From: Salpingoeca rosetta | Lineage: Eukaryota > Protista > Choanoflagellata | Assembly: GCA_033442325.1 (NCBI GenBank) | Contig: JAWQFM010000011.1 | Coordinates: 684,873-748,787 of the forward strand | Length of the DNA stretch: 63,915 nt | Direction of reading: 5' to 3' | Shown here: positions 11,512 to 49,979 of the stretch, piece by piece | Numbering within the stretch: the stretch's first letter is position 1 | Layout: each line of letters begins with the position of its first letter | Program-made: the position numbers and the translations under genes | Notes under the pieces: generated by a model | The model's input: the letters and a program-made list of their open reading frames with translations, nothing else | The model's database searches: none | What the model was told of the DNA's origin: nothing

Positions 11512-14500
11512 TCATGTGCGCGTGGCAACAATCTTGGCAAAGTTGGTGGACATGTGTGTGGAGTAGGGGCCGCGCTGTTGCACTGGAAGACATTTCAGCA
11601 GTCGCAGCGACACGGAGCACAGCGAACGCGCCATGTTGCGGTCCTGCCGTGAGAAGCACTCAATGCCTCGATTCCAAACCTGCAGCAGGCGCAGCGCAAC
11701 CAGAGGGAGAGAATAAGAGACCCATCTTTTTGCACATCAGCAATGCACAATCACCACGAAAAAGCACTACAGGCAGCACTGCGTGTATATAATGAGCTCG
11801 CCGCATAGCCCGTCACTTCCAAAGTGGAACTGCAACCACCAACCTTGATCATGACACACAAAATATCCTCAGCAGCCTGTGCATCAAGGTCAACAGCCAC
11901 ACAAGTTGGCAATTGGAATCAGCGCGCATGACTCAAAAAAATAGCGCGCACAGGCACACACGCACACACAATATACACACAGGCACACAGGCACATGTAT
12001 ACACACAGGCACATGTATACACATACGCACATGTACACACATACACACATGCGCACACAGACAGGTATGGGTTCGCTGTGGGTACCGGCGTTGGTAGTAT
12101 TGTGGCGCTTTTCTTCTCCATGTTTGTGGCCAAGGTGCGTGCAATTTCGAGTGTGGCACTGTCGTCCCCCAACTGGGCAAGGATGTCCGCAATGCTGCGG
12201 AACAGCGGCCTGTTGGGTTTGGTTGGACAATGTGGAAACAAAATGAGCCATGGGCTGAAGCATGAGACTCTATCAGCTGCACATATACATGTCAGGATGG
12301 CAAAGACGCAGCTCGATACACATGCACACATAAAGTCGCACACAAACACAACCACAAACACACAAACAAACACACACAAGCACAAACACACACGCACACG
12401 CACACGCACACACAAACACAAACACAAACACAAATACAAACACAAATACAAACACAAACACAAACACGCCACCAGGGGCACGCTTCACACTGCGATCTTA
12501 CGTTTTGTCTGTGAAGCTGTCCGTGTCGGTGACAATGCCTTCGTGGAGGATGCTGCGGGCAAGCTGCTTATCGCCGTGGCTCAGCGCCAGACCTGTGTCA
12601 CACGACAAGCGGTGGACCTTGACCGTAAAACCACTGCTTGCTTGGCTGCAGTTTGTGGTACAACCCCACACGCACGCCATTGTCTTCCCCTTCTCCCACA
12701 ACACAAAAGGCAAGCACACGCTCTCAAACTCACCAGCTAAGATTTCGTAGCACGTGAGTGGGTTGCTGAGACCACGCGCCTCCTGCCACACCTGCAATCA
12801 CACAGAGCCCGCAGTGAACCTGAGATCATAACGCGCTCAACACACACGATGCACACCAAATTGCACACTGCACATCACACGTTGCACACTACGCAATACA
12901 CATCAACCACAATCACCAACTCTCCACCCCAGCACAAACACACACGTACACACACGTACACATATGGTCGCATCACCAACAACCTTGAGGAGCTCGTTGT
13001 CCTTGATGGTGAGGGCAATGTCAAACTGGAGAATGATGGCCAGGATCTTGTCGCGTTCGCGTCGTGCGGATGTGGCGGCCGGATCACCCGATGACGATGA
13101 CAGCAGCGGTGCAGATGCAGACGACGCTGTGGCTGAGCCGTCGTCGAGAATCGCCGAGCGGTACACCTCGATGGCGCGCTGGGCGTGAATTGCGTCGGCG
13201 TGCGAAGGCGTGTGTCGCTCCTTCGTGCGGCTGACATAGCACGCTGCCGCCAGTAGTGATGAGCGCGCTTTTCGCCGCCGCGCTTCGGGCTTTGACATCA
13301 TGTCATCAAACTGCACGCAAGCCGAGGCGGTTGATGTGGGAGGCTTGATGAATGAGGGAAACAAGTGGGCGAGATGTGGATGTGTGTTTGGGTTTGTTTT
13401 GTACGTGTGCTCTGTGTGCGCGCGTGTGTGTGCGTGCGTGTGTGTGTGTGTGTGCTGTGGTGCTATGTGACGTGCATGCATGCAAAGTGCGTGTGCGTAT
13501 GTGTTGCGGGCAAACTGCTGCACCTGTGAGAGATACAACCTCATCTTCACGAACCTGAAAGCTCAGCTCAAACAGCGGTGCCGCAGTCCTGGGCTCCACC
13601 ACACGACTCACATGTACAGCAATGTTCCAGGCTGGCGTCATGTGCACGTGTGTATGTGTGTGGTGTGTGAGTGTGTGAGTGTGTGTGAGTGTGTGTGAGT
13701 GTGTGTGTACGTGTGTGTACGTGTGTGTGTGAGTGTACACCACACACACATACGCCACACACACATACACCACACACACACACGCACAAACGCATTTGCA
13801 AGCAACAGGCGGTGTTGTTGTGCATGTGGGGATCATTTCAACGCAGTTTGCACGCACGTGCAATTGTTCCAAAGCAACTCACTCATCCGGGCAAACCAGT
13901 CAATGTCCAATGCCTTGTCCTCCGCGCTGTGCTTTTCCTGTTGCTGTTGTTGCTGTTGAGCGCATGATCCCTGTTGACGACACGCAGCCAGTGCTGGTTT
14001 TGGCAGACCAAGGAAGGGGTGAATCACATGCAAGCAATGCAGACAGCAGTGCCGCAAACCTGCAGCAGAAGGGCGTACCACAAACACAAACAGAAGGGCG
14101 TACCACAAACAAAAGGGCGTACCACACCCTCACACCCTCACCCTCACATGCACACACACACTTCCGCGCTCACACATACGCACGCACGCTCAAGCAACAC
14201 GACAAACCCTGTTTGCCGGTTGATGTCACGTCGTCCAGCAGTGACGTTGAGCTAACACCAAGAAATGTAAGCAGGCAAATGTCTTGTGTGAGAGCATGAG
14301 AAGCAAGTCACGCACCTAGGCACACTCTGGCACACCCTTGTCATAAGCAGTCCATGCAAACGCTAACACACACACACACACACAGCACACACAAAGCTTA
14401 CACGACTGTTGGCAGGCTCTTCAGTTCTCGAATGATGAGTCGAAGATGGCACCTCAACAGCAACACCTGGTGTGGCGCTTTCTCCTCCACAAGCGCCTGT

Positions 14501-15674
14501 ATGTTGTTAGCATGATTGTGAGCATTTGACAGGTTTAAGCGATGGAGCCAGTCATGCTTGAAATCGGCGTGTAGGTGCAAATAAGCGTGTTCTTCAAAGT
14601 GTGTGCATGTTTGAGCTCGTATGCAGTGTGTGTACAAGTGTGTGCAAAAGAGAGAGAGTGTGTGTGTGCACTTGGGTTCACAACAACGCCGTGGGAGTAT
14701 GTTGACTGGCATGGCCAACATCAAACAGAGTGTGCACTGCGTGGACTGCATGTGTTTGTGCTTGTACAACGGCTGCCGCAAGTCGTACCTTGAGGACAGT
14801 CCGAGCGCACTGGCGCGAAGACGCTTCGAAGCAGTCTTGAAACGCCAAGCTCAGCAGCCCCAGCTTGCTCTCTGGCCCTTGGTTCGCGCCTTCTCCTTCC
14901 TGGTGACTGATCAGTTCAAGCAGTGCCTTTCGTGCTAAGCACGGGTGCATGTTGACGATGAGGTTGCTCACAGTGAATTCGGGGACATGAAGCCATCGAC
15001 AAACGCACACATACGTGCACTTACAACGCACAAAGCAGCATGCAACCACGCACACATGCAGACTTCGCTGTGCACGAAGAAAGAAGTTGCACACGGTGGT
15101 ACACAGTGGCAACTAAAGGGCAATTGCACCCCAAGTTGCGTACAGATAGCAACACACATCAACCTCTTCCACTCACACAACTCACCGTTCTCTTCGTCCT
15201 TGGAGAGGATGTACAGGCGAAACGAGAGGTAGGACAGGCGCAATGAGGACTGGCTGCGATCGCTGCTCCTGCTGGAGCGTGCTTGCTGCAGTGCAAGTTT
15301 GGCCTCATCAAGCCGATTGAGTCGCAGCAGACACCAGATTCGCATCGCCTGCAAGAAAGGTGGTCGGTTGCATATGGCAAGGACTCGGCTGAGTGGGTGG
15401 CGATGACGTGGGTCTGTGTGTGGCGATGAAATAGTACATGGCCGGCTGCGGATATCGTAGTCAGCACACGTTCACGCAGGTGGAAGCGTTGGCTGTGATA
15501 CCCAATGTCCCTCCTCCCATAACCACACCAACGAGCGGGATGTGGACAACAGGATGCAACATCAAACCTGCCACTGCGTCCCGTCCTCTGATGACATGCT
15601 TGTCGTGATATTTGCTGAGTTGCCGACGTTCAGAGCTTGCAGCGCTCGGTCAACGTCCTCTTCCTGTTGGTGAG

Positions 15675-15737
<63 letters not shown>

Positions 15738-16723
15738 TGCATGTGCAAACACACACGCATACACGCACAACCACACCAACACACATGTGAGCTGAGCTCC
15801 AACAAGCCAGCAGTGACATGCACGTTGTCTGGCACGAGGGACACACTGATAGTGTTGTCACCTGAATGGCGTTGGCGGCTGCGTTCCAGAGGGCAAGGCG
15901 CACACGCTCCTGGTGCACCAACTGCTTCCACAGCTGCGCATCAACCATCTCTGTTGCAACAACACAAGCATGCAGGTTCAAGGCACGCTCCAAGTACATA
16001 GCTGCGTGCTTTCCTGTCACACAGTACCAGGTGTCAGTCGTGGCAGTGGTTGTGCAGACCACGAAGAAACGTACCTTTGAGGGATTGGATGTCTGTCGTT
16101 CGCTTTTGGTCGAGCATCGCGCTGAGCAGAAGGGTGAGTGCCGCTGTCTTGGTGTCGCTTGAATGCAGGTTCTGCTGTAGCATGTGGGCAGCTTCCAGCA
16201 GGTGCTGGCTTTCAACTTTCCTACAATCAACATCCGCAGGGACAGTGAAGCAAGCCGTCGTCAGCAGCATCTACAGCAGCAGTGAAGACAGCAGCAGCGA
16301 CATGTGTCGTGCACATACGGGTGATCGCGAAGGGCCTGCAACATGTCCTTAACAACGTCCAAGAGCACCGTCGCGTCTGGTGGGCGTCGCAACAATGACC
16401 CCAAGCCTGTCAAATAGACACCACAAACGCAAGTGGGATGTGAACGCATGATGTTTGTCACGGAACGGGGGTGGCGTGAAGCAGTTGGTTGTCTGTGGAA
16501 ACAGGTCGGCTGGGGTGATGATGATGCAACCTCTTCACAAAGCACAATGTATACACAGCTACGCGCACATTCGCAGCAGACATCACACACGCACAAGCAC
16601 GTACACCAACACAGTCGCGCACGCACACCAGCACCGATGCGCACGCACACCAACACAGTTGCGCGCGCACACCAACACCGTTGTGCATACTCACAGCAGA
16701 CATTACACACGCTAACACACACC

Positions 16724-16813
<90 letters not shown>

Positions 16814-17737
16814 CACACACACACACACACCGTTGAGGATGGGGGCGGCGGAATCTGATGCTGTCGTGTAAATGCGTGATTTCAGGCCTAGGCTCAGTGC
16901 ATACTCGGTTGGGGAGATCGCATCGACTTCAATGGCGCTGATCAGGGCCAGAGCCTTGTCAGGTTGACCAAGCTGAAGCGTGCACCAAGACATGGCGCGA
17001 ATCACCTGACACTTCTGATTCGCGTGGCTCACGTGGTTCAGGATGAGGGAGAGGGTTTCGTGTGCCAGTGTGTGCTCCTTGTGCTCCAAGCAGGTGAGTG
17101 CAGAGCGATGCATGATGGCGATGACGCGCTCTTGGTGGCTACCAGCTTGCAGCAGAGCGGCAGCTTCTTGCAGGGTCACACGCGCCTTCTGGTATTCCTT
17201 CTGTGCAAGCGCTGCCCGCGTTCGCAGCTCCAACAGCCGGAGCCATTGTGTCTTGTTGTCATCGTGCAGCGTGCCTTGTTGTGACACTGCCCATGCAGCA
17301 TCAAAGGCCTGCAGTGCTGCGCCAGAGTCGCCAAGCTTGGACCACGACGTACCCACGCCCATGCAAATCGACTGTGCAATGTATGGTATGTGTGTGTGTG
17401 GTGTGTATGATGTGTCAATGTGTGTGTGTGTGTTGTGTTGTGTGTGTGTGTGTGTGTGCGTGTGTTGTGTTGTGTGTGTGTGTGTGAGTGAGTGAGTGAG
17501 AGTGAGAGGCAGAGAGAGCGCGCGCGCACACAAAATGTGATGGCAAGTCCACCAGTGAGTTGAGGACTGCATGTGGTATCAATCACGCGGGTAATGACAG
17601 TCCAAAGCCGAGTGAGCATGTCACACTGTAATGGTCAAAGTAACACCTGACCATTTGACTTTGTCGAACACCGTCATTGTGGCTTGGGCCATGGATCATC
17701 AGCAGGTGCATACATTCTGTTCGAACTGTTGTGTGTG

Positions 17738-17814
<77 letters not shown>

Positions 17815-18135
17815 ATGTGTGTGTGTGTGTGTGCTTGGATGTTAATGTGGTGTTTTGAGAGCGCATGTGTTAGCTGATGGGGGGTGAGTGAGTGTGTGAG
17901 TGTGTGCGTGCCAACCGTACACACACACGCGCGTATGGTTTGGTGGAACCATACCTTGACATGTGTCTTTGCTGATTGGCAGGGTGATTGTGTGGTTCCA
18001 GAGGCGTCGAGCAGCAGAGTACAGCTCTTCTTCGCCAAGCGCTTGCTGTTTCGCATACTCTGTTGCCTTGACAGCGAGCCGAGCCTTTTCGCCGCTCTCG
18101 TCGCAATCCAGCACAGCGGAGACGCGCTTCTCCAT
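11512..18135 (-). CDS. TEX11: Meiotic ZMM TPR scaffold TEX11/ZIP4/Spo22, multi-exon
   Basis: N-terminal EEELYSAARRLWNHTI; TPR helices; RLALWNAAANAIQ..AMRIWCLLRLNRLDEAKLALQQA; LLLRCHLRLII; IDWFARMSWNIAV; C-terminal EDILCVMIKVWNRGIECFSRQDRNMARSLCSVSLRLL..*. These blocks are collinear with recalled TEX11 motifs (LWNW, ILWRQAA, WFRKTAWNLAV, WLMVKSWNTG). Internal exon boundaries are approximate. Confidence 0.85.
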
Positions 18136-18492
18136 GGCTGTGCTGCTCGTAGTTGCTTGTCGTTGCTTGTCGTTGCTTGTCGTTGTGCTCTGGTTGTGCA
18201 AGCAGGCGGCTCCTCAGGTCGATGTGTCGTGCTGTTTGCTTAATTGCCTCTTGTCTCGTGGTGTTGTACTCTGGGCTGTGCACCGGTTCTGCGAGCAGGA
18301 TGACGACAGCTTGCAAATGCGACCAGCCACAAGTGCAACATTGGCCGACCGCAGTGCCGCCAAAGAAGACTTGCGCTGTAGTTTGCTGCTTGTGCTGCAT
18401 GTCATGTCGAAGCACACACAGTCGGCGCGAACAACATGCCATAAGTGTGTCCTCCATTTACATTCAGCCGTTCATTCCCATTTTGTTGTTCG

Positions 18493-18597
18493 TTTTGGCG
18501 GGAAAACCAATTGCACACGTTTGTTGACGTTTGTGCACGCGTTCGCGACTGTAAAGAAGAATGAATTGATGATGGCAAGGGGGTCTTCCCGCCAAAA
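18493..18597. promoter_or_regulatory. Two inverted E2F/DP-type sites in the TEX11-DMC1 intergenic region
   Basis: TTTTGGCGGGAAAA at 18493-18506 and TTCCCGCCAAAA at 18586-18597 form an exact 12-bp inverted pair matching the E2F consensus TTTSSCGSSAAA. Confidence 0.6.
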
Positions 18598-18994
18598 TAA
18601 ACCACCAACAACGAACCTTTCACACACACACACACACACCCTCTCTCTACTGCACAAAACATCCATGCACCTGTGCACACATAGTTCCGTTGTCAATTCC
18701 CTGCACACTGGCAGTTGTTCTTGTTGCTCTCGCAACGCTGTTCTCCAGCGATTACCCTACCATGAGACCATGCGCGTCCGATGCGTTTGCAACTTGGCGC
18801 TGCTTCTGAGCAATGGTCATTTCCATCAACCACGGTTCAAGCCAACTGCACATCGAGTCAACTACACCGCACACAAGAGCACCGCCAGCGAAACAACAAC
18901 AGAACGACGCATTGCCCTCCACAATCCCCGCTGATATCACGCTGCATAACACCAACAGCTTCTCTTCCGCACACATACACACACGACCGGCGCG

Positions 18995-21128
18995 ATGGCA
19001 ACCGAAGTTGAGGGTCAAATCCCCATGGAGGAGGGCGAGGGAGAGGAGCTGGATATGATCGAGAAGCTCCAAACCGTCGGCATTGGGTATGTGTGTGTAT
19101 GTGTGTGTGTGTGCGACGCAAGGCGGACGTCTTGCTGATTGGCCGGCTTGTTTGTTTGAGAGCCTGCTTGCCAATGTGCTGCCATTCAAACACAACATCT
19201 CTTCTCACGTCCTTTGCATGCCCTCATTTGTCCCCTCTTTTGATGTAGCATGTCAGACATCACCAAACTCAAGAACGCGGGCTTCTTCACGGTCAAGTCG
19301 GTCATTCTCATTCACCCGAAGAAGCTCAAGGAGCTCAAAGGCTTCTCCGAAGCCAAAGTCGAAAAGGTGTGTATGTGTGTGTGTGTGTGCTTGTCTTGTT
19401 TGAGCTGATTGTCGTGTTTGAGTTGATTGTGCGACGTCAATCCGGCTGCTTTCACTCGTACGGCATTCAGCCATGCTCCAATACCCCGACTCCTTCAATC
19501 ATCCACTCCCTCGCTCACTCTTGGCTCTCACATACACACACATACACATACACACACATACACACTCTTGGTCCTCACACACACACACACTCACGCGCAC
19601 ACTCGCACACCCACTTTTTCTAGGTTCTGGACGCGGCAAAGAAGCTCGCAGTTGGCGACTCCCCGTTTGTGACTGCCGCTAACTTTCTCGAGGCACGTCA
19701 GCAGGTGTTCTTCATCTCCACCGGCGCTAAGGAACTTGACGCCATCCTTGGCGGCGGTATCGAGAGCCAGCAGATCACAGAGGTGAGGTACCAACACGAC
19801 ACGCTGGCTTGGGGCGCAAGCAAGAGCAACATCACATACATACATATGTCTGCATTCCTCTGTTCCGTGACCCTGCTTCTGTACTCGGGCGTCTGGTTTC
19901 AATGCCTAACCCTTGGTATGCCTGCGCGCTGCACCCACTTGCTTGTAGATCCATGGCGAGTACAGGACTGGCAAGTCGCAAATCTGCATGACCTTGGTGA
20001 GTGAGACGTGGGCGTTTGAATGGGACACGGTCGTTTGGTGTGGAGGCGTAGAGGAGTGGAGGAGCGGAAGAGTGGAGGAGTGGAGGAGTGGAGTGGAAGG
20101 GGTTCAAGTATGTTGGGCTATCGAGTGCGTTGGATAAGCGTTTCCTTCCTTGATGCCATCAGCGCTCCACACCTCAACATCAAACGCACGCGCTCACACT
20201 GTGCTCACATCACATCCACCTGCGTGTTGTCCTGTCACTCGCCACTCGCTACTGTCTGGCAGTGCATCTCTGCGCAAGTGCCAACAGATGAGACGAATTA
20301 CTCTGGCGGGAAGGTGATTTACATTGACACAGAGGGCGCCTTCAGGCCGGAGCGCCTGGAGGGGATCTGCGATCGCTTCAACGTTGACTACCAGGCAGCT
20401 CTCAACAACGTCTACTTCTGTCGCGCATACAACAGCGAGCAACTGGTCTGTGGTGTTATGCTTCGAACGCATGATCACATACATCCCACGCTCAACCTCA
20501 ATCAAAGATCCATAGCACGTGTTTCGTTGACACATTTCTCTCACTGCAAGCACGCATAGACTTTCAGTCCTTCTCATATGCACTCACTCATGTCTGCGCC
20601 CTCTCTTTGGCTGGCGAAACGTCCTTCTCCCGCTGTTCTGTCTTGGCTCACAACAGGCCACCTTGATGGCCGATGTTGGTGCCATTCTTGCGCAAGAGGC
20701 TGGCATCGTCCGCCTCCTTATCATCGACTCCATTATGGCCACGTTCCGCACCGACTACTGCGGCCGCGGCGAGCTCGCAGAGCGACAACAGATGCTGAAC
20801 CAGGTCCTCGCTGCCATCAAGCGGCTGGCCGAGGAATGGAACCTTGCTGTCGTCCTCACAAACCAGGTCAGCTCATGCATGTGCTGTGGAAAGACACCTC
20901 GTGATTCTTGCTGTATTGTTGCTGCAAGCATTTGGTCATCTCGTGCCATCCATCGTTGACCGTTCACATGCATGCGGGATGCTGTGCTCGTCGTTGTCTC
21001 AGATGTGCTCAGATCCAGGCGCGACAATGTCGTTCGTCTCCGACCCAAAGAAGGTTACGGATGCGCTTTCACTTTTGTTGAGATGGACGCGGCTCAAAGC
21101 ACTTTAACCACACACACTCCCACTCGAC

Positions 21129-21159
<31 letters not shown>

Positions 21160-21720
21160 CATACATACATACATACATACATACATACATACATACATAC
21201 ATACATACATACATACATACATACACATCCAAACTCCCGCCCGACTCACACATGACTCCCCTCCCCACACACATACATGCACACAGCCTGTTGGAGGCCA
21301 CATCCTGGCACATGCAGTGCAAACACGCCTCTCCCTGCGCAAAGGCAGCGGCGAGCAACGCTTTGCCAAGGTATGACAGACAATGTTACGCTAGGATAAG
21401 GTGTAATTGGGCGGGGGGGGGAGGAGAGAGAGGGATTGATGTACATGTACACGTATTCAGCACTGCCAGGTACATCCTGGCCACAGCAGTTAACATCATT
21501 CGCATGCACACAGGCAAATATGAATTGAATCCACGTTATCACAAACTCAACGCTCGCATCACAAACTCAACTCTCACATCCATGCCTTCCGCCCCTCACG
21601 CGTAACGCACGCCATCCAACACCAAACTACACCCACAACCAGCTTGTGTGCTCGTCCCGGTTCTCGGAGAAGGACGCAAGCTTCAATCTGACCGAAGGTG
21701 GCGTGGCCAACAGCGAGTGA
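18995..21720 (+). CDS. DMC1: Meiosis-specific recombinase DMC1, multi-exon
   Basis: ISTGAKELDAILGGGIES, Walker A GEYRTGKSQ, YIDTEGAFRPER, Walker B LLIIDS, GRGELAERQQ, DPGATMSFVSDPKKPVGGHILAHA. ELAERQQ, DPGATM and GGHILAH are DMC1-type rather than RAD51-type. TGA ends at 21720. Confidence 0.95.
21131..21225 (+). repeat. (CATA)n intronic microsatellite
   Basis: Perfect tetranucleotide run in a DMC1 intron. Confidence 0.95.
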
Positions 21721-21981
21721 TCCCTTTCGCGCAAGGTACAGCCGCACGCGACCACACCACACGCTGGCGTTGTGGGGATGGGCAGATGCGAGGCGCGCGA
21801 GGGCGGTGGGTTCACATGAGTGATGAGTGACAGTGAGTTTGTTTGACCAGTAAAAGCTACAGCGAAAACCATCGATGAAATCCCGACAGCAAAGCAGCAC
21901 AAGAGGGGTGTGGCAGAGTGCACTGCAAGTCGGGGGCAACGCAAAGACATGCATTGAGACATATAGACACCCATGCACACA

Positions 21982-46498: not shown

Positions 46499-47425
46499 CG
46501 CTGTCTGGGGTGCGCCGTTTGCTTCAAGCTTGCTTCTTCTGGGGTGTCAGGGAAGGTCGTTCGTATGCGCTGCTTGTCGTTGCTTTGCGTGGTGGTGGAG
46601 AGTGCAAATCAAAATCAGATCAGCAGGCAACCAGCCAGCAGAAATGCACCGACGGTGACTCATCAGCTGTGAGCATTCAATAAAGATATAACTAATAATC
46701 GCCATCACAACAAAGAGACAAAAGAAAAACAAAAAAAAAAACAGCAACACCACAAAAAGCAAAGAGGAGCGGAAGCAAAACAGGCAACCAGCCAGGCAGC
46801 GGAACGAACGTTGGTGGGTGTTGTGGAACCTTGTCTCGGCTTGCCTTCGTGTTGCCTTGCCCCATCGTCGTGTCTTGTCTTGTGGTGACTTGCTTGCTCG
46901 TGGTGTGGTGTGGTGTGGTTGTTGGGTTTGATTGGGTTGGCTGTTTTTTGCCCTTCACCACTTCAACTCTTTCCATGTCAATTTGCCCTGTCTGCTTTGT
47001 TCCTTTCCAACAACATCTGGTCCTGGTGGTGTTCAGCGACCTGTTGTGCATGCCTGCCTTGAATACTTTGACCACCACGTTTTGAGAACAACTACGACTC
47101 ACACCCCCCGTGCACCACTGCTGTTCGTACACGCTCCTGCAGACCGGTGTCACTTGTTTCCACTGCTTGCTTGCTCGCTCGCGACGTCACTTCACGTCAG
47201 CACAGCCCGTGCTTCACAACGCTCCAATAGCGCTGCTACAGATTCGCAGGTTCGCAGGTTCGCTTCCCCGCCGTCGCCACGCCATCATACGTGACCACGT
47301 TGCGCATCGCGTTGGAGCTGCGTCACCTCTCTCCTCCCCCCTCTCTCCGTCTCTGTTTCTTTCCCGGCCACGGCAACATAGTTTGACGTGCACGCGATTG
47401 AGCACCAAGCACAGTAACGGCGAGC

Positions 47426-49979
<2,554 letters not shown>

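What the first reader, a model, noticed from the sequence alone, without database searches (positions are those of the whole stretch)
18493..18597. Twin inverted E2F-type sites centred between the meiotic genes
Seen: TTTTGGCGGGAAAA (18493-18506) and TTCCCGCCAAAA (18586-18597) form a perfect 12-bp inverted pair about 360-400 bp from each ATG. I noticed no comparable site in other intergenic regions of the window. Known: this is the high-affinity E2F/DP motif, and in mammals E2F6 (PRC1.6) silences meiotic genes through TCCCG-type sites. Inference: E2F/DREAM-type gating of meiotic genes may predate animals, with one element controlling both genes.
Basis: partly seen in the sequence, partly recalled or inferred. 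Interest (0 to 1): 0.8.

Follow-up and report, generated by a model that had tools for sequence, protein, structure and literature searches.

The report
Conserved twin E2F sites between ZIP4/DMC1
Two mirror-image copies of the optimal binding sequence for the cell-cycle regulator E2F lie midway between two head-to-head meiosis genes (ZIP4 and DMC1) of the choanoflagellate Salpingoeca rosetta. A wild marine relative keeps them in the same layout although the rest of the promoter has diverged beyond recognition, so they are very probably a real shared switch, which extends E2F control of meiotic genes known in mammals, plants and ciliates.

Summary
TTTTGGCGGGAAAA (18493-18506) and TTCCCGCCAAAA (18586-18597) form a perfect 12-nt inverted pair: 2 hits of the 11-mer against 0.00 expected. 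The window is Salpingoeca rosetta scaffold GL832964.1. The pair sits 358 and 398 nt from the start codons of two divergent genes, DMC1 (EGD72724) and PTSG_04451, an 883-aa ZIP4/TEX11/SPO22 homologue.

The main new result comes from a Tara Oceans contig (L008) of an uncultured choanoflagellate. It has the same head-to-head ZIP4-DMC1 pair and the same inward-facing pair of TTTGGCGGGAAA sites near the middle of an unalignable intergenic region, plus a third site. Fourfold-degenerate sites are saturated between the two species. GGCGGGAA occurs 3 times there against 0.009 expected.

The sequence equals the published optimum for E2F2-DP1 and E2F8. Published RNA-seq shows DMC1 at about 0.4 TPM in growing cells. 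In one mutant DMC1 rises about 37-fold and ZIP4 2.4-fold.

I conclude these are selected E2F-family sites in a shared bidirectional promoter, probably repressive outside meiosis. Binding, transcription start sites and genome-wide enrichment were not tested. The specific analogies are weak: E2F6 is vertebrate-specific, and neither species has a CHR element or an E-box. DREAM repression of DMC1 in plants was published in 2026, so this is a new member of a known kind. This scan had already noted E2F sites at other genes of this genome; those notes are unverified.

The parts
18493..18506 (+). E2F-type site A, TTTTGGCGGGAAAA, on the ZIP4-proximal side
   Evidence: Read directly and matched. It is contained in the E2F8 co-crystal DNA and fits the SELEX seeds for E2F8 and E2F2-DP1. 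It shares a 14-mer with L008.
18586..18597 (-). E2F-type site B, which reads TTTTGGCGGGAA on the minus strand, on the DMC1-proximal side
   Evidence: The same orientation relative to the two genes is found in L008 at 1424-1436.
18482..18608 (.). Extended imperfect inverted repeat around the two sites, with 27-nt arms at 81% complementarity
   Evidence: The fold has z = -2.67. The extension beyond the 12-mers is not conserved in L008.
18424..18431 (+). Weaker E2F-like core GGCGCGAA, 69 nt on the ZIP4 side of site A
   Evidence: L008 has a third site, ATGGCGGGAAAG, at a similar offset of about 55 nt on the ZIP4 side.
18357..18364 (-). Weaker E2F-like half site, TTTGGCGG on the minus strand
   Evidence: It has no counterpart in L008 and may be chance.
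18507..18511 (+). CCAAT pentamer directly abutting site A
   Evidence: L008 has a CCAAT only about 150 nt away, so its conservation is doubtful.
18537..18548 (.). CpG-rich ACGCGTTCGCGA in the middle of the spacer
   Evidence: It is absent from L008, and its function is unknown.
18136..18994 (.). 859-nt divergent intergenic region, a putative bidirectional promoter
   Evidence: Gene table of L002. L002 is identical to window 8995-31720.
18995..21720 (+). DMC1 gene (P0271, EGD72724, 340 aa), coding range including introns
11512..18135 (-). PTSG_04451 (P0344, EGD72723, 883 aa), a ZIP4/TEX11/SPO22 homologue, coding range including introns
   Evidence: The Pfam SPO22 model is not matched.

Best explanation
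The two 12-mers are binding sites for E2F-family proteins, kept by selection at the centre of a bidirectional promoter shared by ZIP4 (PTSG_04451) and DMC1. The binder would be a typical E2F-DP heterodimer with a pocket protein, or an atypical two-domain E2F7/8-type repressor. What is shown: the sites exist, they match the experimentally optimal E2F sequence, and they are conserved in number, orientation and central position in a second choanoflagellate whose neutral DNA is saturated. What is inferred: E2F proteins occupy them. Because DMC1 is almost silent in proliferating cells even though E2F activity must cycle there, the complex is probably repressive in vegetative cycles. It would be relieved or replaced around pre-meiotic S phase, so that meiotic recombination genes are tied to the cell-cycle entry decision. 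The sign of regulation and the joint control of both genes are the least certain steps.
For: Motif and chance: (GGCGGGAA 2 observed against 0.012 expected, P=0.0003). [quoted passage not shown] Conservation: L008 carries DMC1 on the plus strand and ZIP4 on the minus strand. Its intergenic region reads TTTGGCGGGAAA, then the five bases TCAAG, then TTTTCCCGCCAAA, with a third site upstream. GGCGGGAA occurs there 3 times against 0.009 expected, with none of 3000 simulations reaching this. TTSSCGCS occurs 6 times in the contig against 0.80 expected. The two intergenic regions cannot be aligned, and the only long shared non-repeat words are the motif, up to a 14-mer. At fourfold-degenerate sites, 25 of 35 differ. 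Factors: the choanoflagellate M. brevicollis has E2F, E2F7/8, DP and RB genes (PMC3224931). Expression: DMC1 is about 0.4 TPM in four wild-type samples. In the cRFXa mutant DMC1 has logFC +5.2 and ZIP4 +1.26, while the WD40 neighbour's TPM values are similar in mutant and wild-type samples (no test statistic was retrieved for it). Precedents: plant DREAM components bind and repress the DMC1 promoter. Mouse E2F6/PRC1.6 represses meiotic genes, and E2F motifs are the most enriched at STRA8-activated genes, which include Dmc1 and Tex11. Ciliates have a meiosis-specific E2F/DP pair.
Against: There is no binding or mutational evidence. Transcription start sites are unknown, and the sites are 358 and 398 nt from the ATGs. 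That fits promoter-proximal E2F sites only if the 5' UTRs are about 300 nt long. ZIP4 is clearly expressed in vegetative cells (logCPM 6.35) while DMC1 is nearly silent, so the two genes are not simply co-regulated. The DMC1 rise in the cRFXa and FoxJ1 mutants is unexplained and may be indirect. No CHR element is present, which weakens a DREAM-specific reading. A canonical E2F site upstream of DMC1 is missing in Hydra, Spizellomyces, Oopsacas, Priapulus and Batrachochytrium. Enrichment of the motif at other S. rosetta meiotic or cell-cycle promoters could not be tested, because only this window and one 22.7-kb locus were readable. The presence of E2F, DP and RB in S. rosetta itself was not checked here.
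Confidence: 0.62

Rival explanations
1. These are ordinary G1/S-type activating E2F sites, as at RAD51 and other replication or repair genes. They would drive expression in every S phase and would have nothing to do with gating meiosis.
For: Genes of the RAD51 family and DNA repair genes are classical E2F targets (established knowledge; one search lists Rad51 among genes with E2F motifs). ZIP4 is moderately expressed in growing cultures (logCPM 6.35). No CHR or E-box is present.
Against: DMC1 is about 0.4 TPM in four wild-type proliferating samples and can rise more than 30-fold. Two optimal E2F sites therefore do not give it S-phase expression in mitotic cycles.
Confidence: 0.2
2. The sites are functional E2F sites but serve only one of the two genes. 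Their central position would be a by-product of the short intergenic region.
For: The two genes have very different basal levels and different fold changes.
Against: The head-to-head pair and the central, symmetric, inward-facing layout are both conserved in L008, although the spacing differs: 5 nt against 79 nt between sites, and 542 against 859 nt of intergenic DNA. Both genes move in the same direction in the cRFXa mutant, whereas the WD40 neighbour's TPM values look unchanged.
Confidence: 0.1
3. A different DNA-binding protein that recognises the GC core (a GC-box or zinc-finger type factor) uses the sites, not E2F.
For: No binding data exist for any choanoflagellate E2F.
Against: What is conserved is the whole 12-14-nt element with its T-tract and A-tract flanks, which is the E2F signature, and not only the GGCGGG core. 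E2F specificity is shared by animals and plants.
Confidence: 0.06
4. The pair is a chance palindrome, a remnant of mobile-element ends, or a DNA or RNA hairpin with no sequence-specific reader.
For: The 127-nt stretch folds better than shuffled versions (z = -2.67), and the arms extend to 27 nt at 81%.
Against: The same sequence, not merely the pairing potential, is kept in L008 with a very different loop, 5 nt against 79 nt. There are no other copies in the window and no Rfam match. Chance is excluded.
Confidence: 0.02

Closest known systems
Optimal E2F site defined by SELEX and crystallography (Morgunova et al. 2015, PMC4686757)
   Same: Site A, TTTTGGCGGGAAAA, is contained in the E2F8 co-crystal DNA. 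Both sites fit the seeds for E2F8 and for E2F2-DP1.
   Different: That work used human proteins. The specificity of choanoflagellate E2F proteins is assumed, not measured.
Plant DREAM repression of DMC1 (TCX5/6, ALY, with E2FB recovered on the promoter; Sci Adv 2026, PMC13674478 and PMC13674485)
   Same: The target gene, DMC1, is the same, and it is kept off outside meiosis by an E2F-containing cell-cycle repressor complex.
   Different: In Arabidopsis recruitment is through TCX (LIN54-type) sites such as TTCAAA. Here no CHR or TTYGAA element exists in either species, and the conserved elements are E2F sites. ZIP4 is not reported there as sharing a promoter with DMC1.
Mammalian E2F6/PRC1.6 silencing of germline and meiotic genes (Pohlers 2005, Kehoe 2008 and Dahlet 2021, as cited)
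   Same: A TCCCGC-core E2F site in promoters of meiosis genes that are silent in mitotically growing cells.
   Different: E2F6 is a vertebrate-only subgroup. No CACGTG E-box for MGA/MAX is present. Whether Polycomb and DNA-methylation follow-up exist here was not examined.
Meiosis-specific E2F/DP in ciliates (Tetrahymena E2fl1 and Dpl2; Paramecium Tfdp)
   Same: E2F-family factors are tied to meiosis in a unicellular eukaryote.
   Different: Those factors are listed as meiosis-specific E2F/DP transcription factors. Whether they activate or repress, and what their target sites are, was not examined here, and the factors here are unidentified.
E2F motif enrichment at STRA8-activated genes in mouse (Kojima 2019, PMC6392498)
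   Same: Dmc1 and Tex11 belong to a gene set whose start sites are most enriched for E2F motifs, which links meiotic entry to the G1/S programme.
   Different: That is a statistical enrichment in a mammal with a vertebrate-specific activator, STRA8. Here there is a single locus with phylogenetic footprinting.

Membership tests
E2F-family binding site (cis-element) | Match to the consensus TTTSSCGC and to the SELEX optimum TTTGGCGGGAAA, including the A/T flanks | tested here: met
   Both sites carry the GGCGGGAA core with a T-tract on one side and an A-tract on the other.
E2F-family binding site (cis-element) | Conserved in the orthologous promoter of a diverged species | tested here: met
   L008 at 1407-1418 and 1424-1436, plus a third site near 1350-1361. 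Synonymous sites are saturated.
E2F-family binding site (cis-element) | Lies close to the transcription start site | tested here: inconclusive
   The sites are central in the intergenic region, 358 and 398 nt from the ATGs.
E2F-family binding site (cis-element) | E2F, DP and pocket proteins are encoded by the organism | not tested
   They are reported for the choanoflagellate M. brevicollis. An unverified scan note mentions a pocket-protein gene in this genome.
E2F-family binding site (cis-element) | Occupied by E2F in vivo or bound in vitro | not testable with these tools
   This needs EMSA, CUT&RUN or ChIP.
DREAM target promoter | A CHR element (TTYGAA) for LIN54, alone or next to a CDE/E2F site | tested here: not met
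   There is no TTYGAA or TTTAAA in either intergenic region. E2F-only DREAM targets of the G1/S class remain possible.
DREAM target promoter | The gene is repressed outside its proper phase and derepressed on loss of MuvB or a pocket protein | not testable with these tools
   The only indirect evidence is that DMC1 is about 0.4 TPM in growing cells and is inducible.
E2F6/PRC1.6 germline-gene silencing | Presence of an E2F6 paralogue | not tested
   The literature places E2F6 as a vertebrate-only subgroup, so membership is unlikely.
E2F6/PRC1.6 germline-gene silencing | A companion E-box, CACGTG, for MGA/MAX | tested here: not met
   None is present in either intergenic region.
Bidirectional promoter | Two divergent genes with start codons less than 1 kb apart, an arrangement that is conserved | tested here: met
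   859 nt in S. rosetta and 542 nt in L008.
DMC1 (right-hand gene) | A Rad51 domain that is closer to DMC1 than to RAD51 | tested here: met
   Pfam Rad51 at E = 2e-94. One exon scores 75 bits against DMC1 structures and about 50 bits against RAD51. The NCBI name is DMC1.
ZIP4/TEX11/SPO22 (left-hand gene) | Match to the Pfam SPO22 model PF08631 | tested here: not met
   hmmscan at E up to 1 finds only weak TPR hits. No precomputed Pfam hit is on record.
ZIP4/TEX11/SPO22 (left-hand gene) | Overall likeness to ZIP4 proteins in size, TPR solenoid, language-model features and fold | tested here: met
   Atlas features score 0.96-0.97 with SPO22/ZIP4/TEX11 clusters of plants, fungi and chordates, and all ten best hits with a Pfam family share that family or clan. 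The top structural row is a ZIP4 homologue with TM 0.46/0.52. The UniRef name is Protein ZIP4 homolog. The length is 883 aa.

The most novel reading that the evidence does not exclude
An E2F-pocket protein gate on the meiotic recombinase DMC1 is ancestral and has been kept since before animals, plants and choanoflagellates diverged. In choanoflagellates it has been built into a compact two-gene recombination module, ZIP4-DMC1, with one symmetric twin-site operator. Editing the operator would then unlock or block meiosis in the closest living relatives of animals.
Probability: 0.3. Interest if true: 0.7.

Novelty: new member of a known kind. Interest (0 to 1): 0.55.

Why it matters
How unicellular relatives of animals decide between mitotic and meiotic cycles is not known, and no cis-regulatory element of a meiotic gene has been described in a choanoflagellate. 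This locus offers a small, sharply defined and phylogenetically footprinted element between two core recombination genes. S. rosetta has working genome editing (the gene-editing table of the cRFXa study lists guide RNAs and repair templates) and, from my own knowledge, inducible mating. Testing the element would show whether the link between the E2F cell-cycle machinery and DMC1 also holds on the animal stem lineage. That link is seen as E2F6/PRC1.6 in mammals and as DREAM in Arabidopsis. In practice, a derepressible meiotic promoter could help genetics in S. rosetta. The concept itself is no longer surprising after the 2026 plant papers.

Tried and rejected
All later references lie beside them, for example 16829-17371. 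I infer from their sizes that runs X20-X24 are small transcriptome-sized assemblies of the same species. They hold almost none of the region's words. This fits low expression, but the run types are only guesses.

2. Ordinary profile searches built on a real DMC1 scaffold (A3, and A8 in simulation) ranked S. rosetta's own protein about 110th. What worked was an alignment of a stop-free non-coding span with one exon (A10, A12).

3. Pfam SPO22 on ZIP4 exons and on the full protein gave no match. An Atlas search with one exon gave only generic TPR hits.

4. Global alignment of the two intergenic regions is meaningless. I used shared-word analysis instead. A shared 14-mer alone has P of about 0.011, so the stronger test is the one on the a priori motif.

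5. The JGI metagenome scan found only relatives at 28-58% identity (best segment) of unknown taxa. Three of them have their locus's only TTTSSCGC upstream of the Rad51-family ORF. Neither the taxon nor the paralogue is resolved, so I did not use them as evidence.

6. The Capsaspora DMC1 locus is not on record.

7. Rfam gave nothing.

8. An X-box as an explanation for the cRFXa effect: the palindrome at 18723 is not conserved in L008 and is not in the authors' motif list.

9. Three representative proteins (P0022, P0025, P0027) looked primate or human-like. I fetched no contigs for them and did not use them as queries. They were present only in a bulk local file of all returned proteins.

Full report
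OBSERVATION. The sequence reads TTTTGGCGGGAAAA at 18493-18506 and TTCCCGCCAAAA at 18586-18597. The second is the reverse complement of TTTTGGCGGGAA, so the two form a perfect 12-nt inverted pair separated by 79 nt. Weaker symmetry extends to 27-nt arms at 81%. The 11-mer TTTSGCGGGAA occurs only at these two places in the 63.9-kb window, against 0.00 expected. Inside the intergenic region GGCGGGAA is seen twice against 0.012 expected, P=0.0003. Looser patterns are uninformative: TTTSSCGC gives 9 hits against 6.0 expected. The other three GGCGGGAA hits in the window lack the A/T flanks or lie in DMC1 exon 5. The same intergenic region also holds GGCGCGAA at 18424, CCGCCAAA at 18357, a CCAAT abutting site A, and ACGCGTTCGCGA in the spacer.

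WHERE THIS IS. The window is Salpingoeca rosetta ATCC 50818, scaffold GL832964.1. Locus L002, fetched through the organism's DMC1 protein, is identical to window 8995-31720 with 0 mismatches in 22,726 nt.

The right-hand gene (18995-21720, plus strand) is DMC1 (EGD72724, 340 aa). Pfam Rad51 scores 2e-94. One exon scores 75 bits against solved DMC1 structures and about 50 bits against RAD51.

The left-hand gene (11512-18135, minus strand) is PTSG_04451 (EGD72723, 883 aa). The Pfam SPO22 model does not match it. Even so, its language-model features score 0.96-0.97 with ZIP4/SPO22/TEX11 clusters from plants, fungi and chordates. Its best structural neighbour is a ZIP4 homologue (TM 0.46/0.52), and UniRef names it Protein ZIP4 homolog. 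I accept it as a divergent ZIP4/TEX11 homologue.

The sites lie 358 and 398 nt from the two start codons. The centre of the pair is about 20 nt from the midpoint of the 859-nt intergenic region.

THE KEY TEST: A SECOND SPECIES. The profile search in the search for homologous proteins built on DMC1 exon 6 (A10) returned a fragment, P0270. It is carried by 17 marine metagenome contigs, among them contigs from the Tara Oceans project. The longest, L008 (3,264 nt), encodes a DMC1 orthologue on the plus strand, with exons about 84-98% identical and ATG at 1714. On the minus strand it encodes a ZIP4 homologue that is only 40% identical over residues 1-60 and 86-267, with ATG at 1171. The head-to-head pair is therefore conserved in an uncultured choanoflagellate.

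At fourfold-degenerate sites inside a 65-codon stretch of identical protein, 25 of 35 differ, so neutral DNA is saturated. Accordingly, the two intergenic regions (859 and 542 nt) cannot be aligned.

Yet L008 reads TTTGGCGGGAAA, then TCAAG, then TTTTCCCGCCAAA at 1407-1436, and it has a third site, ATGGCGGGAAAG, about 55 nt towards ZIP4. GGCGGGAA occurs three times there against 0.009 expected, and none of 3000 simulations reach this. The only long non-repeat words shared by the two regions are this motif, up to the 14-mer TTTGGCGGGAAAAC. A shared 14-mer of any sequence has P of about 0.011.

Orientation relative to the genes is the same in both species. GGCGGGAA reads on the DMC1 coding strand at the ZIP4-proximal site and on the opposite strand at the DMC1-proximal site. 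In both species the centre of the pair is about 20 nt from the midpoint, on the ZIP4 side. Only the spacing differs, 5 nt against 79 nt. Because the sequence itself is kept, not merely its pairing potential, a protein reader is favoured over a hairpin. Rfam finds nothing.

WHAT READS IT. Morgunova et al. 2015 crystallised E2F8 on TTTTGGCGGGAAAAA. They report SELEX seeds NTTTGGCGGGAAAN for E2F8 and WWWTGGCGGGAAA for E2F2-DP1. They mined the in vivo motifs from ChIP-exo peaks for E2F2 and DP1 and from a published E2F7 ChIP-seq set. Site A is contained in the crystallised DNA. A typical E2F, an E2F7/8 member, DP and RB are all encoded in the choanoflagellate M. brevicollis, whereas E2F6 is a vertebrate-only subgroup. 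I did not verify these genes in S. rosetta.

EXPRESSION. In Coyle et al. (bioRxiv 10.1101/2022.11.11.515474, supplementary file 5), DMC1 is 0.38-0.48 TPM in four wild-type samples. It rises with logFC +5.2 (FDR 5e-67) in the cRFXa mutant. In two of three FoxJ1-mutant samples it reaches 7-11 TPM. ZIP4 rises with logFC +1.26 (FDR 5e-11) in the cRFXa mutant but has a substantial baseline, logCPM 6.35. The WD40 neighbour shows similar TPM in mutant and wild-type samples (no test statistic was retrieved for it), and the V-SNARE neighbour moves by +0.63. DMC1 is thus tightly off in proliferating cells despite two optimal E2F sites. This argues against plain S-phase activation and for a repressive or conditional use. 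The joint rise of the two genes fits a shared element, but their different baselines show that it is not the only input.

COMPARISON WITH KNOWN SYSTEMS. Neither species has a CHR element (TTYGAA) or a CACGTG E-box. DREAM recruitment through LIN54 and a PRC1.6-type E2F6 plus MGA/MAX arrangement are therefore not supported. An E2F-only site class remains, used in animals by RB-E2F, by DREAM at G1/S genes and by E2F7/8.

Published work already connects E2F machinery to meiotic genes.
- Mouse E2F6/PRC1.6 represses meiotic genes.
- E2F motifs are the most enriched at STRA8-activated genes, which include Dmc1 and Tex11.
- Tetrahymena and Paramecium have meiosis-specific E2F/DP factors.
- In October 2026, Arabidopsis DREAM components were shown to bind and repress the DMC1 promoter in somatic cells.

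The claim that such gating predates animals is therefore plausible but no longer new as a concept.

OTHER DMC1 PROMOTERS. Results across opisthokonts are patchy.
- Amphimedon has its locus's only TTTCGCGC at -81 (P=0.039).
- Saccoglossus has its only TTTGGCGC at -450 (P=0.040).
- Sycon has E2F-like cores followed by TTTGAA at -609, which is not significant.
- Hydra, Spizellomyces, Oopsacas, Priapulus and Batrachochytrium have none upstream.

Long first introns or unannotated 5' exons may hide the true promoters in some of these species. The ZIP4-DMC1 pairing itself was seen only in the two choanoflagellates.

VERDICT. The most likely mechanism is E2F-family binding at a shared bidirectional promoter (confidence about 0.6). 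I prefer a repressive role in vegetative cells, but this is not shown. It is a new member of a known kind. Earlier unverified notes from this scan report E2F sites at Polo, kinesin-5, a pocket-protein gene, Claspin and a TERB1/SYCP3-like cluster in the same genome. If they are confirmed, they would place this locus in a wider E2F regulon.

Noticed in passing
window 18723-18736: An X-box-like palindrome, GTTGCTCTCGCAAC, lies about 260 nt upstream of the DMC1 ATG (2 such palindromes in the window against 0.35 expected). DMC1 is among the most strongly up-regulated genes in the published S. rosetta cRFXa mutant. However, the authors list no RFX motif for this gene, and the palindrome is absent from L008.
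   Followed up: partly
window 18995-21720 (DMC1) and 11512-18135 (ZIP4); published RNA-seq: DMC1 is about 0.4 TPM in wild type but 7-11 TPM in two of three FoxJ1-mutant samples, and it has logFC +5.2 in the cRFXa mutant. The cause is unknown. Possibilities are clone history, ploidy, or a stress or sexual state.
   Followed up: partly
L008 1-3264: Seventeen marine metagenome contigs, among them contigs from the Tara Oceans project, carry a DMC1 exon that is nearly identical in protein to S. rosetta's. ZIP4, however, is only 40% identical. This points to a widespread uncultured relative whose genome would be useful for footprinting S. rosetta promoters.
   Followed up: partly
L007 and L034: DMC1 is flanked by an L7Ae-family ribosomal or snRNP gene (divergent, upstream) and a Sad1/UNC gene (downstream) in both Saccoglossus and Priapulus. 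This looks like conserved bilaterian microsynteny.
   Followed up: no
L004, about 609 nt upstream of the Sycon DMC1 ATG: TTTTCCGCGATTTTCCCGCGTTTTTTGAAC holds two E2F-like cores followed by a CHR-like TTTGAA, which looks like a CDE/CHR composite. By motif count it is not significant.
   Followed up: no
window 21725-21732: A TTTCGCGC lies 5 nt after the DMC1 stop codon, in the convergent gap before the V-SNARE gene. It is probably chance.
   Followed up: no
window 18153-18193: A 10-nt tandem repeat, TTGCTTGTCG, occurs 3-4 times next to the ZIP4 start codon, in the presumed 5' UTR.
   Followed up: no
window 47402-49168: A 589-codon open stretch with a long polyglutamine and histidine run has relatives in another choanoflagellate-like data set (P0342, P0343, about 60% identity) and no Pfam domain.
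   Followed up: no
L016, L017, L025 (JGI metagenome contigs): In three contigs of unknown eukaryotes, the only TTTSSCGC of the whole locus lies 55-400 nt upstream of a Rad51-family ORF. Whether that ORF is DMC1 or RAD51 was not resolved.
   Followed up: no
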